NCBI GenBank assembly: GCA_025594325.1
Contig: JANHCV010000013.1
Span: forward strand, 1,302,001-1,366,000
Length of the DNA stretch: 64,000 nt
Source: Blastocladiella emersonii ATCC 22665
Taxonomy: Eukaryota > Fungi > Blastocladiomycota
Direction of reading: 5' to 3'
Part shown: positions 48,355 to 54,080 of the stretch, in pieces
How positions within the stretch are numbered: position 1 is the stretch's first letter
How the letters are laid out: each line of letters opens with the position of its first letter
Translations under genes and position numbers: made by a program
Notes under the pieces: model-generated
The model's database searches: none
What the model was told of the DNA's origin: nothing
What the model saw: the letters and a program-made list of their open reading frames with translations, nothing else

Positions 48355-49977
48355 ATGAGCTCCGATCGTGACCAGCCACCGGCATCGCTCGCAGGCCGGC
48401 GATCCATGCCGCGATCGCCGACGCTCCGCGGCGCTCGCAGGTCACGGTCGCCGAGAGCAGACTCGTGCAGCTCGAGCAACGACGACGGCGATCTTGAGTC
48501 CATGTCGTCGCTATCGACGTGTCTTTCCTCTCCTGCAGCTCGTGCGGAGCACGCCGGCTGGTCTCGCGACCCACCTGCTACTCCGCCCCGTGCCAACTCG
48601 GCCCACTCCCCGCGCGCTGTCACGCTCTCGCCGTTGCTCGCCAACTCGGCGGCGCCCAAACGCTCGGTGGTCGCCGAACTTGCGCCGCCGTCCTTGCAAA
48701 CGTGCCCTTCCTCCACTCCGCCACGATCTCGTGCCGTCCGCTCTCCGTCCACCATCACACTCTCGCCGTTGCTCGCTGCTTCTGCGGTCGAAGGATCGGA
48801 CGCGGACGAGCCTGCACCGTTGCAGGAGCCCGATCCCGACGACGCCCCGCGGCGGCGGCGGCATCGCAAGCGGGATACGGACGCGCGTCGGTACCTGTGC
48901 CCGGACTGCGGCGAGCAGTTTAAACGCGCCGAGCACCTGCACCGCCACTCTCGGACCCACACAGGTGCTAAGCCGTTCCCGTGCCCGTATCCCGATTGCA
49001 CCAAGGCCTTCTCGCGCCCCGACACGCTGGCGGCTCACGTCAAGGTGCACGAGCGCCGCGGGGAAACGTGTCCGGACGCGGATGCTGCGGCGCCGTCTGT
49101 GGGTGGCGACGGCGACGTGTCGACGAGCTCGGCCGTCTTGGAGGCCGACGAGGATGCCGAGGACTCGATTGAGCCGCCCAAGAAGAAGCGCAAACCGGCG
49201 CCACGGCTACATCCTCGCCGATTGGACGGCAGCACGGCGGCGAACATCGCGCCTGACATTGTTGCGGCCGCTGCAGCCGAGAGCGCCCAGCGACACGTAC
49301 TCGCTACATCTGCACCGCCCGAGGAGGCCGTTGCCGCGCCGACTGTTCGGCCCTTGCCCGTCGCCCCGCGTCCGCCTCCGCCCGCCGCAGTGTACAGCAG
49401 CGAGTACCATGAATCGACAGGCTGGGGCCTCCTGCCTTTGCCGCCCAACTCGCAACCCCCGCCCGAGCAGCAACTCCCACCCAGCCCGCAACCCCCACCC
49501 AACCCGCAACCTCCACTCGAGCCGCTTCCCGCACAACCTCCACCAGTCCCGCAAACTTTACCCGACCCGCACCTCATGGACTACTGGTCATCGCTGCAGC
49601 TCATGTACCAGGCGCACCCGCTTCTCGGGTACCAGCTGCCGTTGCCTGTGGATCCGTACCTGGTCCCCTTCGCGTTTCCGGGCTTCACTCACCCCACGCC
49701 GCTGTACTCGCCGCCGCCCGGATACCCGGCAGCGAATGCAATTTTTGCTGGCCTTCCGCTGCTTCCCGCCCACGACCCGCTCTCAGTCGCGTTTCAGTCG
49801 AACCCCTACGGTCCCCCGCAAGCTCAGCAGCATTCTCACTCAGTCGTGGCGGGCACGAGCGCCGGACCTGCGACACCGCTCGACGGGATCGCTTCTGGCT
49901 CGACGGCGCCCATCGCGCTTCAGCAGGCCGCGGGCAGCGACGGGGACCGAGCGCCGGCGCCAGATCGGACGCAGTGA
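48355..49977 (+). CDS. C2H2 zinc-finger transcription factor with two fingers
   Basis: YLCPDCGEQFKRAEHLHRHSRTH, TGAKPF linker, CPYPDCTKAFSRPDTLAAHVKVH, basic PPKKKRK and a Pro/Gln-rich C-terminus. Confidence 0.88.
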   Translation: MSSDRDQPPASLAGRRSMPRSPTLRGARRSRSPRADSCSSSNDDGDLESMSSLSTCLSSPAARAEHAGWSRDPPATPPRANSAHSPRAVTLSPLLANSAAPKRSVVAELAPPSLQTCPSSTPPRSRAVRSPSTITLSPLLAASAVEGSDADEPAPLQEPDPDDAPRRRRHRKRDTDARRYLCPDCGEQFKRAEHLHRHSRTHTGAKPFPCPYPDCTKAFSRPDTLAAHVKVHERRGETCPDADAAAPSVGGDGDVSTSSAVLEADEDAEDSIEPPKKKRKPAPRLHPRRLDGSTAANIAPDIVAAAAAESAQRHVLATSAPPEEAVAAPTVRPLPVAPRPPPPAAVYSSEYHESTGWGLLPLPPNSQPPPEQQLPPSPQPPPNPQPPLEPLPAQPPPVPQTLPDPHLMDYWSSLQLMYQAHPLLGYQLPLPVDPYLVPFAFPGFTHPTPLYSPPPGYPAANAIFAGLPLLPAHDPLSVAFQSNPYGPPQAQQHSHSVVAGTSAGPATPLDGIASGSTAPIALQQAAGSDGDRAPAPDRTQ

Positions 49978-50336
49978 TCAAGTCCTCCTCTGTCGCGGGA
50001 GCGCCATTTGTATATACTCAATCAATCCATTTCTAACTCATAGCCGTCTCGATCGAGCGAAAAGACGAGATGCGTCGAAGCGAGCATCACCTGACGAGCA
50101 TCACCTGACCGAATGTCTCGCGTTTCACGACGCGTCTCGCACGCGTCGCCCACCGTGTCCCTTGTCGCGCCACTTGTCCGCAAACTTGTCGCGCACTCAA
50201 GACCACGGACAACCGCGGCAAATCACTCGATCCGCTAGCGCTGGGAGACGCGCAAAGTCAGCTCCGACCATGAGCGGCCGCGTCCGCGAACTCTTACCGC
50301 CACTATGCTTCATGAAACTCAACGAACGATCATGCA

Positions 50337-53300
50337 ATGAGGCTGAAATGTAAACCTCATCGAGCGGCGGCACGATGCTCGCTCGCCTTCTCGCTCGTCG
50401 TCCTCGCGCTCCTCGTGATCGGCGCACCGCGATCCGCGACTGCTGCCAACTTCACAATTGGCATCGGGATTCCGACGGGGCTGACGGGATATGTCGGCGC
50501 ACTGGCAAGATGGATGCAGATGATCATGGAAATGAATCTCGCACAGCTCAACGCCGAGATCGCGCAGCCGAAAGGTACGCGGCGCTGGTACCGACTGAAC
50601 CGGTATGCGCTGAACCTGCCTGCCGTGTCTAGGCCACAACTTTAGCCTAACCTTTCGCGACACCAACTCGCTCCGTGTGACGGGCGTGAGCCGCATGCTC
50701 GAGCTGGTCGACGCGGGCGCCGTGGCCGTCGTCGGCGACCTGTACTCGGACATGACCATGTCGCAGGCCTACGCCATCGCGCGCAACCGCGTCTTCCAGT
50801 GTACCGGGTCGGCCACCTCGGACACGCTGTCCAACAAGGCCGAGTTCCCGTACGTGTACCGCACGGTGCCTACCGACAGCTACCAGGCCGTGGTCATGCT
50901 GCGCACACTCCAGCATCTCGGCTGGACCGGGGTCAACGTGATCAGCGCGACCTCGTCGTACGGGACCTCGCGTACGTGCTCGCCGTGCCGCCGCGCCGAC
51001 CGACGCTGACTGAACATCCGAGTAGTTCTCTCAACCTTCAACCAGTACGCCGCCCAGTACCAGATCACGTCGTACCTCCAAACGCGCCTCGACGCCTCCC
51101 CAAAAGACGCCGATGTGCAGGCTGTGGTCCAGCAGCTCGCCGATAGCCCGTCACGCGTGATCGTGACCATGGCCGATGTCGATCTGCTATACCGCATCGC
51201 GACCGAGGCCGCGCGCCAGGGCCTCAACCCGCAGGACTGGGTGTGGCTCGCATCCGAGACCGTGCTGCTGCTTCCGCAGTTCCTCGGCTCGCTGACCAAC
51301 GACACGGCGCCCGCCAACTCGTTCCTGCAGGGGATCCTCGGCACTTCGCCGCTCGAGCAGGACGCGTCGGCCGCACGATACCAGACGCTGGTGCAGCAGT
51401 GGAAGGCGACGTACAACAACTCGATCATCACCGACCAGTGCGTCTATTGTTTTTTCTTCCACGCGTGCCTCGAGGCCAGCGTCCGTGGCGTCGTCGCCCT
51501 CGCCGACAAGTTCGGCACACCCGCGGTCCTCGCGCGGACACACAACGCGACGCTCGCCGACTTTCTCGTGCCCTTCGACAGCGCCACGGGGCCCGTGCGG
51601 TACTCGGCCAGCGGCGACCGCCTCGGCCTGTACCAGATCATCAACCTGCAGGGCGCCGCGACGCAGCCCGTGCTCTCGGTCGCGGCGGACCTCAGCATGA
51701 CGCCGACCGGGATCCCGATCGTGTACACGGGCGGCAAGACGGCCGTCAAGTCGTGGCGCACCGAGATCTCGGTCTCGGTCCCGTCCTACTCGTCGCCCGG
51801 CGTCATCGTGCTGCTGACCGTGAGCGCGCTGTCGGCGGTCCTTGTGATCGGCACCTTCGTGTACCTGTTTACGTTCCGCAAGTCGAAACGCGTACGTCAC
51901 ATTGGCGTACCGTTCCTCATGGCCTTTTCGGTCGGGCTCGTCGCCAACCTGCTGTCGCCGTTCGTGTGGGCGGACATTCCGACCGAGGCAGGATGCACCG
52001 TGTCGAGCTGGCTCGCGATCTTTGGCTCGTGCATGACGCTCTCGGCGCTCGGGATGAAGGCGTTCCGCATCGTACGCATCTACGACAAGTACGTGCCGTC
52101 CGCTGTTCGTGCCGAGCGCTTCACTCACAATCGCCCGCGCCCGTAGCCGCATTCTCGCCAACTCCAAGTCGCTCGGGACACGACACCTGCTCGCGCGCAT
52201 GGTGATTCTACCCCTCGCCCAGATCGCCATGTTCATCGTATCGGCCACGGTCGCGCCGTCGCACCCGACGTCGAGCGTGTCCAAGGCCGTCATGACGTAC
52301 GCGTGCACGTCGACGAAACCCACGGTCGCCGACGCGCTGGCTGCCGTGGCCGGGTGCGCGGACCTGGTCCTTCTCCTCGCCAACGTGTACCTGGCGACCA
52401 AGATCCGGCGCACGCACACGACCTACCTCGAAACCTCGTTCATCGCCATGAGCATCCACCACCTCACGCTCACGGTGGCCATCGCCGTGTCGCTGCTCCT
52501 GCTGCTCCCCGTCAACGCCGTGTCCGGGTTCTACATCAAGTCGGTCGCCGTCGTGTACCCGAACCTGGTCGCGTTCTACGCCATGAGTACGTTCGCCGGG
52601 CGCCTGAGTGTGCGAACGCTGATCGTGACTGCGCTGCGTAGCGCTCCGCCACGTCCACCTGGTGCGCCGCGAGGCCATCGAGGACTCGGATGGGACCATC
52701 GTGTCGCATCACCGCGACGCGGGCTCGTCGTCCAACTCGGAATGGACCGCGTCCGGCCAGGCGAGTGGTTCGCGATCCACGGCGGCCAAGGTACGCTAGC
52801 GACTCTCTCGTGGCTGTTTGAGCTTCCACTCACTCTCTATATGCGCGTGTAGTCGATCACGGGCAAGTTCGCCATGAAGCGGTCCAACCGATTCTTCGCC
52901 AACTGGGAGATGCGGTCGCTGACCGTCGTCCCGTTCGAGGGTACCTCACACTCTCGCCCAAACCGCGCCTCGACATTCCGCTGACCCGCTCGCTTGGTAG
53001 GCGTGATCCTGGTCGGCAACCCGAACCCCGACAAGCCAAGCCTCGCGCTAGCCATCGCCACGTCGACCGTGACGACGGACGTGCCCGAGTACCCGATGTG
53101 CATCGTGCTCTCGCACCGCGGCACCGACCCGCTGCTCGTCCAGTTCGTCTCGGAGCTCGAGCAGAAGTCGTGGCTCACAGTGCTCGGCAAGGCAGGCGTC
53201 GTCGCGCGGCAGTCGCAGTCCGGGTCCCGGTCGTCGGGCAGCGGCGGCAAGCGAAGCGGACCTGTGCCGCAGGCTCCGGGATCGAGTAAGAGCGGCGGCG

Positions 53301-53401
53301 GTGCGGCGGCGGGCGCCAGGCTGCCGGCCGTTGCTTCAACGCACTCGCTGTCGGAGTTGGATGAGGAAGAGAGCGGCCCGGTTTCACTCCCGCGGACATA
53401 G
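50337..53401 (+). CDS. Class C GPCR-like receptor: Venus-flytrap domain, 7TM_3 and a PH-like C-terminal domain
   Basis: Signal peptide and flytrap motifs AVVGDLYS and SATSDTLSNKAEFPYVYRTVPTD. Seven hydrophobic segments with CTVSSWL...KAFRIVRIY and KIRRTHTTYLETSFIAMSI. Six GT-AG introns give one continuous frame to the stop at 53401. Confidence 0.85.
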
Positions 53402-54080
53402 ATTGCGCGCGTTCGTTATATTCATTGAATCGAAGCGCACGCCACCGCGTCTGCGGTAGCGCCAGCGCGACAGACTCCTCGTCGTTCGCGTGGACCACGA
53501 GCGGCAGCGGCCCACGGATGAGCACCGACTGCAGGACGGCGATGACGAGCTCGGCCAATGCGGCGGAGTCAGGAGGCACGGCGATTGCGGAGACGGGCGA
53601 GGATATGAGTACTTTTGGCCGCCGCGGCTGCGTCGTGGTCCCATCGAGAAGCACGATGAAGTACGCCAACGACGGGAAGCAGTCGATGTTAAGGTCGCAG
53701 AGGTGCGCGGTGCGCGGGTTGCCGTGGTCGAGGTTCGTGGTGTGGTGGTCGTGGTAGCGTTGGCGGGCTGGATCGAAGCGAACGACGACTTGCCCTTGAC
53801 GGTCAGCTTGCAGTTGTCGGGCTCGGCGGACACAGCGCACAACTCTTGCCGCCGGCCTCACAGCCGCGGTGCCCAGCGCCGCTTCTTGGCCCGCGTGTGC
53901 GCGAGGCGGGACTTCGACTGCAAGCAGCCCGGCGCGTTGCGCGAGCCGGCGCAGACGGATCGGTCGCCCGTGCGCCGCTCCGCGCGGTTCCGGTCGTGTA
54001 GCTCGAGGAGGAGCTGCGCGATCTCGAGAGCCACGCAGTTCGCTGCAGCATCGTCGGTCGCATCCGAGACCTGGATCTAG
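53400..54080 (-). pseudogene. Degenerate coding remnant
   Basis: Protein-like stretches in different frames (VALEIAQLLLEL, ELCAVSAEPDNCKLTVKG, FPSLAYFIVLLDG...ELVIAVLQSVL) separated by stops and frameshifts. Confidence 0.3.

What the first reader, a model, noticed from the sequence alone, without database searches (positions are those of the whole stretch)
50337..53401. Class C GPCR fused to an apparent PH domain
After TM7 and a Ser-rich linker, splicing (introns 52791-52852 and 52941-53000) yields SITGKFAMKRSNRFFANWEMRSLTVVPFEGVILVG...PMCIVLSHRGTDPLLVQFVSELEQKSWLTVL. This matches the PH pattern: a basic beta1-beta2 loop with K...W..R and a C-terminal helix with the invariant Trp. Venus-flytrap class C receptors are absent from Dikarya but reported in some early-diverging fungi and Dictyostelium. 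I do not know of a flytrap-7TM-PH fusion as a described architecture. It could couple nutrient or amino-acid sensing to phosphoinositide or G-beta-gamma binding, for example in zoospore chemotaxis (inference).
Basis: partly seen in the sequence, partly recalled or inferred. Interest (0 to 1): 0.72.

Follow-up and report, generated by a model that had tools for sequence, protein, structure and literature searches.

The report
Fungal nutrient-type receptor with PH tail
This is a real seven-exon gene of the water mould Blastocladiella emersonii encoding a class C G-protein-coupled receptor whose cytoplasmic tail ends in a genuine pleckstrin-homology (PH) domain, an arrangement shared by many relatives in early-diverging fungi but, as far as I could find, never described in a paper.

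Summary
Window 50337-53401 (+) holds a seven-exon gene of 905 codons. Its six short introns all begin GTAC and end TAG. It is GenBank KAI9156063.1, a "hypothetical protein" of Blastocladiella emersonii ATCC 22665. Exons 1-4 encode a signal peptide, a Venus-flytrap domain (ANF_receptor) and a 7tm_3 core with no cysteine-rich domain. Exons 6-7 encode a PH domain. AlphaFold2 gives pLDDT 94.9. The 50 best Foldseek matches are all PH domains, with VIA Z of 11-13.6. A profile of 79 homologous tails hits only PH domains in PDB (best 1.7e-6). The window's own tail scores below Pfam's cut-off, so databases list no PH for it. The fusion is not specific to this gene. 87 of 150 cluster representatives carry the tail, from Blastocladiomycota, Chytridiomycota and one Mucorales species. 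Both tail introns sit at the same positions in Allomyces. One paralog encodes the domain in a single exon. The strict phosphoinositide motif is mostly absent (2/79), but the β1-β2 hairpin is basic. Weak binding to an anionic membrane or to a protein partner is therefore likelier than specific lipid recognition. No RNA run was available. First readers of this scan noted the same architecture on three other pieces of this genome. I rate it a new variant of a known kind, of moderate to high interest.

The parts
50337..50574 (+). Exon 1: start codon, signal peptide (hydrophobic peak at aa 10-28) and the first strand of the Venus-flytrap domain (AANFTIGIGIP).
   Evidence: in-frame stop just upstream. 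Alignment A2 shows the signal peptide and the AANF(T/K)I motif shared with relatives. The GenBank model starts later, at Met 50532.
50633..50971 (+). Exon 2: flytrap lobe 1, including the conserved Ser (GDLYS) and the SATS..LSNK..FPY.YRT motif.
   Evidence: Pfam ANF_receptor 1.3e-17. Aligned to mGluR8. S53 is invariant in A3.
51026..52088 (+). Exon 3: rest of the flytrap domain, joined directly (no cysteine-rich domain) to TM1-TM3.
   Evidence: Pfam ANF_receptor 7.4e-10 and 7tm_3 6.1e-12. Hydropathy peaks.
52147..52586 (+). Exon 4: TM4-TM7 of the 7tm_3 core.
   Evidence: Pfam 7tm_3 5.9e-8, profile positions 113-223. Hydropathy.
52642..52790 (+). Exon 5: cytoplasmic Ser-rich linker of about 50 residues between TM7 and the PH domain.
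   Evidence: The family's median linker length is 51 aa.
52791..52852 (+). Intron 5 (62 nt, GTACGC...TAG), just before PH strand beta1.
   Evidence: The same position is used in Allomyces P0002 and in paralog P0006. Retention gives a stop after 2 codons.
52853..52940 (+). Exon 6: PH strands beta1-beta2, with the conserved beta1 Lys and the invariant Trp.
52941..53000 (+). Intron 6 (60 nt, GTACCT...TAG), phase 1, inside the conserved Gly codon of the EG turn.
   Evidence: The same position is used in Allomyces P0002; the intron is absent from paralog P0006, whose PH domain lies in one exon. Retention gives a stop after 13 codons.
53001..53203 (+). Exon 7, first part: PH strands beta3-beta7 and the C-terminal helix (QF.SELEQKSW...).
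   Evidence: AlphaFold2 pLDDT 94.9. Foldseek and VIA return only PH domains. Profile against PDB.
53204..53401 (+). Exon 7, remainder: low-complexity Ser/Gly-rich tail with an acidic end, then stop TAG at 53399-53401. The GenBank model instead splices 53301-53356 and ends earlier.
   Evidence: The 3' end is unresolved without RNA.

Best explanation
This is an intact gene of Blastocladiella emersonii for a class C (glutamate-family) G-protein-coupled receptor. It has a signal peptide, an extracellular Venus-flytrap ligand-binding domain joined directly to the seven-helix core (GABA-B-like layout, no cysteine-rich domain), and a flexible Ser-rich cytoplasmic linker of about 50 residues. After the linker comes a canonical PH domain, then a short low-complexity tail. 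The architecture, the PH fold and its conservation are shown by the tests here. The rest is inferred. The flytrap probably binds a small nutrient-type ligand such as an amino acid, because it keeps the Ser and Thr that hold the ligand backbone in mGluR and CaSR. The seven-helix core probably signals through a heterotrimeric G protein. The tethered PH domain probably uses its positively charged beta1-beta2 end to lie against the anionic inner leaflet of the plasma membrane, or against a partner held there. That would keep the receptor tail at the membrane and make localisation, turnover or output depend on local lipid or partner state. It would be a low-affinity membrane or adaptor module, not a stereospecific phosphoinositide sensor.
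For: Gene model: seven exons in frame, six uniform introns, one stop. It is identical over 807 residues to KAI9156063.1, which was found with exon 3 alone. Receptor: ANF_receptor and 7tm_3 on separate exons; seven hydrophobic segments plus a signal peptide; nearest solved relatives are the mGluR, CaSR and T1R flytraps. PH domain: the A1 profile hits only PH domains in PDB, and TAPP1 scores 1.7e-6 over the full length, matching the ..VQ..S.EE...W.. motif. 41 of 79 tails hit PF00169, best 1.8e-6. AlphaFold2 gives pLDDT 94.9 and pTM 0.86 with seven strands and a helix. Foldseek's top 50 are all PH, and VIA gives Z 11-13.6 at rmsd 2.1-2.8 A over about 95 residues. Language-model neighbours are all from the PH clan. 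Fusion is real and old: 87 of 150 representatives carry the tail after TM7. They come from Blastocladiella, Allomyces, Catenaria, Sorochytrium, six chytrid genera and Radiomyces. Introns 5 and 6 lie at the same positions in Allomyces, and paralog P0006 encodes the PH domain in one exon. Membrane-facing pole: the beta1 Lys/Arg is present in 75 of 79; the beta1-beta2 hairpin has a median net charge of +3 against -2 for the rest, and +4 against -3 in this protein.
Against: There is no transcript evidence: no RNA run was listed, so splicing rests on comparative data and on gene predictions. The window's own tail is below Pfam's PH cut-off (14.1 against 25.1 bits). The strict phosphoinositide motif K..(K/R)x(K/R) is present in only 2 of 79 tails. 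The key beta2 Arg/Lys is present in 16 of 79, this protein among them, and His is commonest there. No ligand, G-protein coupling, lipid binding or localisation was or could be tested here. The role of the flytrap Ser/Thr pair is recalled from knowledge of mGluR and CaSR structures, not tested.
Confidence: 0.85

Rival explanations
1. The PH domain is mainly a protein-docking module rather than a lipid binder. It could hold G-beta-gamma, as the PH domain of GRK2 does, or a small GTPase or a scaffold, pre-assembling the signalling complex on the receptor or mediating receptor pairing.
For: The canonical phosphoinositide motif is incomplete in 77 of 79 tails. Most PH domains in general are poor lipid binders (general knowledge). 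The GRK2 and GRK3 PH domains are among the profile and fold matches (1bak 0.014 and 9ijj 0.014; 7k7z Z 11.2). The best VIA matches include protein-binding PH folds: SHARPIN, and Exo84 bound to RalA.
Against: The matches to GRK2 are no better than those to dozens of lipid-binding PH domains, so they carry no specific signal. The conserved beta1 Lys (96%) and the basic hairpin are what a membrane-facing PH domain would keep. No partner is identified.
Confidence: 0.3
2. The PH domain is a stereospecific phosphoinositide sensor, for example of PI(3,4)P2 or PIP3, linking receptor activity to PI3-kinase polarity signalling during zoospore chemotaxis.
For: This particular protein keeps the two most important canonical contacts, the beta1 Lys and the beta2 Arg at W+3. 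The best profile match is the PI(3,4)P2-specific TAPP1 PH domain. Good fold matches include ASAP1, centaurin alpha-1, DAPP1 and Akt.
Against: The residue at W+1 is Glu here. Only 2 of 79 relatives have the full motif, and His replaces the beta2 Arg in the plurality, so a family-wide specific lipid sensor is unlikely. Fold similarity does not show function.
Confidence: 0.15
3. The join is an artefact. The receptor ends after exon 5, and the PH exons belong to a separate small gene or to non-coding DNA, or the gene is a pseudogene.
For: No RNA evidence could be obtained. All relatives are themselves computational gene models. The GenBank model differs from mine at both ends.
Against: The same order (7TM, linker, PH) recurs in 87 representatives from three phyla. 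Intron positions are shared with Allomyces, and the paralog has the PH domain as one exon only one intron away from the 7TM exons. The spliced junction restores the conserved EG motif and a domain that folds at pLDDT 94.9. There is no ATG-initiated ORF for the PH part alone and no frame disruption anywhere.
Confidence: 0.04

Closest known systems
GABA-B receptor subunits (class C GPCR: Venus-flytrap domain joined directly to the 7TM core)
   Same: Signal peptide, ANF_receptor flytrap and 7tm_3 core with no nine-cysteine domain between them (no NCD3G hit). One chytrid relative is even named 'GABA type B receptor subunit 1' by its annotators (P0089).
   Different: By sequence the flytrap is closer to the mGluR, CaSR and T1R structures than to GABA-B. 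The cytoplasmic tail carries a PH domain. From general knowledge, the GABA-B subunits instead have a coiled coil there for heterodimerisation.
Fungal 'Glutamate' class GPCRs (class 16 of PMC12842992; Krishnan et al. 2012, PMC3251606)
   Same: This is the same family: 7tm_3 receptors, mostly with ANF_receptor, enriched in Blastocladiomycota and Chytridiomycota and nearly absent from Dikarya.
   Different: Those surveys, and PMC3971589, PMC12716839 and PMC5168858, catalogue N-terminal extracellular domains only. None mentions a C-terminal PH domain.
GPCRs with fused cytoplasmic domains: oomycete GPCR-bigrams and RpkA-type GPCR-PIPK, GPR155 (DEP), plant 7TM-RGS
   Same: A seven-helix receptor with a signalling-related domain fused to its cytoplasmic C-terminus. 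The link to phospholipid signalling in GPCR-PIPK is conceptually close (PMC6033456, PMC5784254).
   Different: Bigrams are defined by catalytic accessory domains on non-class-C cores. Here the partner is a non-catalytic PH adaptor on a flytrap class C receptor, and the lineage is Fungi.
PH domains of TAPP1, ASAP1, centaurin alpha-1, pleckstrin and GRK2
   Same: Same fold, and the same core motifs: the beta1 Lys, the Trp at the start of beta2..Q..S.EE...W in beta7 and the helix.
   Different: Identity is only 12-20%. The beta2 basic pair that defines high-affinity phosphoinositide binders is mostly missing. Those domains sit in soluble proteins that are recruited to membranes, whereas this one is permanently tethered to a membrane receptor.

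Membership tests
Class C (glutamate-family) GPCR | Seven-helix core matching 7tm_3 (PF00003) | tested here: met
   Exon 3 scores 46.2 bits (profile positions 2-101) and exon 4 scores 33.1 bits (113-223). PF00003 is precomputed for P0001. Seven hydrophobic segments.
Class C (glutamate-family) GPCR | Extracellular Venus-flytrap (ANF_receptor / periplasmic-binding-protein type I) domain behind a signal peptide | tested here: met
   PF01094 at 1.3e-17 (exon 2) and 7.4e-10 (exon 3). Hydrophobic N-terminal peak at aa 10-28. mGluR, CaSR and T1R flytraps are the best PDB hits.
mGluR / CaSR / T1R subgroup of class C | Nine-cysteine domain (NCD3G) between the flytrap and the 7TM core | tested here: not met
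   No NCD3G hit at E up to 1 on any exon. About 20 residues separate the end of the flytrap match from TM1. The layout is therefore GABA-B-like.
PH domain (PF00169, PH-like clan) | Seven-stranded beta sandwich closed by a C-terminal helix | tested here: met
   AlphaFold2 model with pLDDT 94.9: strands 5-13, 22-29, 34-37, 47-50, 54-57, 66-71, 77-80 and helix 84-97. Foldseek top 50 all PH with TM 0.6-0.77. VIA Z 11-13.6.
PH domain (PF00169, PH-like clan) | Significant sequence-profile similarity to PH domains | tested here: met
   The family profile A1 against PDB returns PH domains in all 60 hits shown, best 1.7e-6. 41 of 79 tails hit PF00169 at E<0.1 and about 5 reach the gathering level. This protein alone does not: 14.1 bits against the 25.1 cut-off.
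PH domain (PF00169, PH-like clan) | Conserved Trp in the C-terminal helix | tested here: met
   Position 90 of the tail alignment is Trp in 60 and Phe in 14 of 79, and Trp in this protein.
High-affinity phosphoinositide-binding PH domains | Basic motif K-Xn-(K/R)-X-R across beta1-beta2 | tested here: not met
   The full motif is present in 2 of 79. This protein has the beta1 Lys and the beta2 Arg but Glu at W+1. K/R at W+3 is present in 16 of 79 and His in 31 of 79. Actual lipid binding is not testable with these tools.
GPCR-bigram (PMC6033456) | C-terminal catalytic accessory domain | tested here: not met
   The only domain after TM7 is a PH domain, which is non-catalytic. The definition was read.

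The most novel reading that the evidence does not exclude
A PH domain permanently tethered to a class C receptor may be an ancestral fungal device, present in Blastocladiomycota, Chytridiomycota and at least one Mucorales species and lost with the receptor family in Dikarya. It would make the receptor itself read the state of the inner membrane leaflet or hold G-beta-gamma. In that case a nutrient-sensing GPCR would carry its own polarity or desensitisation module, doing in one polypeptide what animals do with soluble PH-domain proteins such as GRK2. This would be a previously unrecognised way of wiring GPCR signalling in motile zoospores.
Probability: 0.25. Interest if true: 0.75.

Novelty: new variant of a known kind. 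Interest (0 to 1): 0.6.

Why it matters
Class C GPCRs are known in zoosporic fungi, but all the surveys I could read looked only at their extracellular domains. A conserved cytoplasmic PH domain, found on 87 of the 150 best-scoring representatives and across three fungal phyla, gives these orphan receptors a concrete and testable intracellular handle. It links amino-acid-type sensing to membrane-lipid or G-beta-gamma biology in cells that swim and crawl. It also adds a non-catalytic member to the short list of GPCRs with fused cytoplasmic signalling domains. Current annotation misses the domain: the protein is listed as hypothetical with no PH hit, and the model lacks its signal peptide. Spizellomyces punctatus can be transformed (PMC7213984) and has several such receptors, so PH-deletion and localisation experiments are feasible.

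Tried and rejected
- **RNA support.** The look-up of sequencing runs listed no run.
- **Single-sequence searches of the tail.** phmmer of exon 7 against PDB gave nothing. Pfam on exon 7 alone gave PH at only E 0.26. The domain became clear only with the family profile.
- **Word-index searches.** P0001 with its region restricted to the tail found only itself. The full-length alignment A3 overflowed with candidates and returned five proteins, among them a bat mGluR6 and a plant GLR. Neither search helped map the family, so one search was left unused.
- **Exon 1 against P0004.** BLASTP was not significant. A multiple alignment was needed to see the shared signal peptide and AANF motif.
- **Supplementary tables of the B. 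emersonii genome paper.** They are not held.
- **tblastn exon mapping.** It gave fragmentary output and was replaced by an exact-match mapper.
- **Rejected ideas.**
  - The conserved C.E and QF.S motifs are not a family-specific interaction surface. The TAPP1 alignment shows that E.. and Q..S.EE...W are ordinary PH core motifs.
  - The long relatives P0039 and P0136 are not new multi-domain fusions. P0136 looks like a merged gene model, with aminotransferase and MOSC domains upstream.
- **Joined model.** Exons were searched by reference, and the database protein P0001 stood in for the spliced product. Exons were joined only inside local scripts, to check frame, length and hydropathy and to compare with P0001.
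Full report
**1. The observation**

Reading 49800-53900 and translating three frames gives a seven-exon gene on the + strand. The exons are 50337-50574, 50633-50971, 51026-52088, 52147-52586, 52642-52790, 52853-52940 and 53001-53401.

Joined in a local script only to check the frame, they make 2718 nt (905 codons) with one stop at the end. The six introns are 54-62 nt long. All begin GTAC, all end TAG, and all have a CTGAC- or CTCAC-like motif 10-25 nt upstream of the acceptor.

An in-frame stop lies 8 codons before the ATG at 50337. Keeping intron 5 or intron 6 would end translation after 2 or 13 codons. The window is about 66% G+C.

**2. Whose gene it is**

The operators' rule is to search a spliced model exon by exon, so I sent exon 3 (353 residues, by reference) to the exhaustive representative search. 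The word search cannot reach proteins of about 900 residues from a 353-residue query, and the family scan had left the tail open (PH E = 0.26).

The top hit, P0001, is 100% identical. It is KAI9156063.1, hypothetical protein H9P43_009173 of Blastocladiella emersonii ATCC 22665. P0001 equals my model from residue 66 to 872, through all six splice junctions.

It differs from my model at both ends:
- It starts at an internal Met (50532) and so lacks the signal peptide and the first flytrap strand. Alignment A2 shows that relatives have both, and share the AANF(T/K)I motif with exon 1.
- It removes a seventh intron, 53301-53356 (GTGCGG...GAG). This intron does not fit the pattern of the other six. 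That end cannot be settled without RNA, but it lies beyond the PH domain.

From here on P0001, a database protein, stands in for the spliced product.

**3. The receptor part**

Pfam on single exons gives:

| Exon | Family | E-value |
|---|---|---|
| 2 | ANF_receptor | 1.3e-17 |
| 3 | ANF_receptor | 7.4e-10 |
| 3 | 7tm_3 | 6.1e-12 |
| 4 | 7tm_3 | 5.9e-8 |

No NCD3G was found. Hydropathy shows a signal peptide and the transmembrane cluster. The layout is therefore flytrap joined directly to 7TM, as in GABA-B receptors.

By sequence, however, the nearest solved structures are the mGluR8/6/3/7, CaSR and T1R3 flytraps, at about 1e-12. In that alignment the Ser of GDLYS (invariant in A3) and the Thr of SATS match the positions that hold the amino-acid backbone in CaSR and mGluR. 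Those roles are recalled from the structural literature and were not tested here. An amino-acid-like ligand is thus a reasonable inference and no more.

**4. The tail is a PH domain**

Alone, the window's tail is weak:
- PF00169 scores 14.1 bits against a cut-off of 25.1.
- phmmer against PDB finds nothing.
- Language-model neighbours are all PH families, but at 0.88, which is only a lead.

The family settles the question. A local iterated search with P0001:679-780 found the same segment after TM7 in most of the 150 representatives. I aligned 79 of these tails as A1.

- **Profile against PDB.** The A1 profile returns PH domains in every one of the 60 rows shown. The best is TAPP1 at 1.7e-6, aligned end to end and matching the beta1 Lys, the Trp at the start of beta2 and the ..VQ..S.EE...W.. 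motif.
- **Pfam on individual tails.** 41 of 79 tails hit PF00169 at E<0.1. About five reach the gathering level, for example P0044 at 32 bits.
- **Predicted structure.** AlphaFold2 on P0001:676-780 with A1 gives pLDDT 94.9 and pTM 0.86, with seven strands and a C-terminal helix.
- **Fold searches.** Foldseek's top 50 are all PH domains at probability 1.00; ASAP1 scores E 1.5e-5 with TM 0.72, and centaurin alpha-1 has TM 0.77. VIA-align gives Z of 11-13.6 at rmsd 2.1-2.8 A over about 95 residues.

**5. The fusion is real, old and common**

With an HMM of A1, 87 of the 150 representatives have a strong PH hit at the C-terminus, and several more have weak hits. Most of those without a hit are short or end within a few residues of the last helix, so they are fragments or truncated models.

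Named members come from:
- Blastocladiomycota: Blastocladiella (at least four genes), three Allomyces species, Catenaria and Sorochytrium.
- Chytridiomycota: Spizellomyces, Powellomyces, Geranomyces, Phlyctochytrium, a Chytridiales isolate and Polychytrium.
- Mucorales: Radiomyces spectabilis, with full ANF_receptor and 7tm_3 matches.

The linker from TM7 to the PH domain has a median of 51 residues.

Mapping proteins back to DNA gives further support:
- The Allomyces ortholog P0002 has introns at the same places as our introns 1, 3, 4, 5 and 6. These include the phase-1 intron inside the Gly codon of the EG turn in the middle of the PH domain.
- The B. emersonii paralog P0006 keeps intron 5 but has no intron 6, so its PH domain is one uninterrupted exon.

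In the absence of RNA (none was listed), this is the best available support that exons 6 and 7 are joined as proposed. First readers of this scan noted the same architecture on three other pieces of this genome. Those notes are unchecked, but they agree with the paralogs I found.

**6. How it probably works**

Column statistics on A1:

| Feature | Count |
|---|---|
| Lys/Arg at the end of beta1 | 75 of 79 |
| Trp at the start of beta2 | invariant |
| Position W+3 (canonical phosphate-binding Arg) as Lys/Arg | 16 of 79 |
| Position W+3 as His | 31 of 79 |
| Full K..(K/R)x(K/R) motif | 2 of 79 |

The window's protein has the beta1 Lys and the beta2 Arg, but Glu at W+1.

The beta1-beta2 hairpin is nevertheless basic. 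Its median net charge is +3 against -2 for the rest of the domain, and +4 against -3 in this protein. This is the usual polarity of PH domains that lie against acidic membranes.

I therefore favour a low-affinity membrane or adaptor role for a domain that is already tethered at the membrane by a 50-residue linker. It would position the tail and make localisation, turnover or coupling sensitive to the local lipid or partner state.

The rivals are:
- A protein-docking role, for example G-beta-gamma as in GRK2. The GRK2 PH domain is among the matches but is not distinguished from the rest.
- A specific phosphoinositide sensor. This is possible for this paralog but unlikely for the family as a whole.
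- An annotation artefact, which the comparative data make very unlikely.

None of the functional steps is shown; all are inference.

**7. What is known**

Fungal class C receptors were reported by Krishnan et al. 2012 (PMC3251606). They are counted as class 16, enriched in Blastocladiomycota and Chytridiomycota and nearly absent from Dikarya, in PMC12842992.

These two papers, PMC3971589, PMC12716839 and the gut-fungus survey PMC5168858 analyse N-terminal domains, and none mentions a PH domain. The B. emersonii genome paper notes GPCRs with "multiple gene architectural forms" but gives no detail in its main text, and its supplements are not held. Oomycete GPCR-bigrams are defined by catalytic accessory domains. 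Further full-text searches found nothing on a flytrap-7TM-PH receptor.

The library excludes most subscription journals, so this is "not found", not "does not exist". A few members pass Pfam's PH threshold, so domain databases very probably already display the architecture without comment.

**8. Verdict**

The finding is a new variant of a known kind: a conserved, apparently undescribed cytoplasmic PH module on the class C receptors of early-diverging fungi. Interest is moderate to high (0.6). The function is open but directly testable.

Noticed in passing
window 50337-50574 against 50532: The GenBank model KAI9156063.1 starts at an internal Met (50532). It therefore lacks the signal peptide and the first flytrap strand, which relatives have. 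The upstream ATG at 50337 follows an in-frame stop and restores both.
   Followed up: yes
window 53301-53356: The GenBank model removes a seventh intron (GTGCGG...GAG) and ends ...SGGVG*. This intron does not fit the GTAC...TAG pattern of the other six. Unspliced reading continues in frame for 33 more codons to TAG at 53401. This is unresolved without RNA.
   Followed up: partly
window 48355-49977 (+): The upstream neighbour is a 540-codon ORF with tandem C2H2 zinc fingers (YLCPDCGEQFKRAEHLHRHSRTH...FPCPYPDC...HVKVH) and long Pro-rich stretches. It is probably a transcription factor gene.
   Followed up: no
L002 (Allomyces macrogynus GG745358.1) and L001 (B. emersonii JANHCV010000011.1): Five of the six intron positions are shared between the Blastocladiella gene and its Allomyces ortholog, including the phase-1 intron inside the PH domain. 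The B. emersonii paralog P0006 has lost that intron but has several extra ones in the 7TM region.
   Followed up: yes
P0120 (Radiomyces spectabilis, Mucorales): A non-flagellated Mucoromycota species has a full ANF_receptor-7tm_3 receptor with the same PH-like tail (residues 839-931). The architecture is therefore not confined to zoosporic fungi.
   Followed up: partly
P0044 (Catenaria), P0136 (Phlyctochytrium), P0039 (B. emersonii, 2664 aa): Some relatives look like merged gene models. P0044 has a second PH-like segment at residues 50-138, ahead of its flytrap, perhaps the tail of a tandem upstream paralog. P0136 carries aminotransferase and MOSC domains in front of the receptor.
   Followed up: partly
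whole family: Only 203 of 1.84 billion cluster representatives match exon 3 at E<=0.001. This fungal receptor clade is small and far from the animal class C receptors at the single-sequence level.
   Followed up: no
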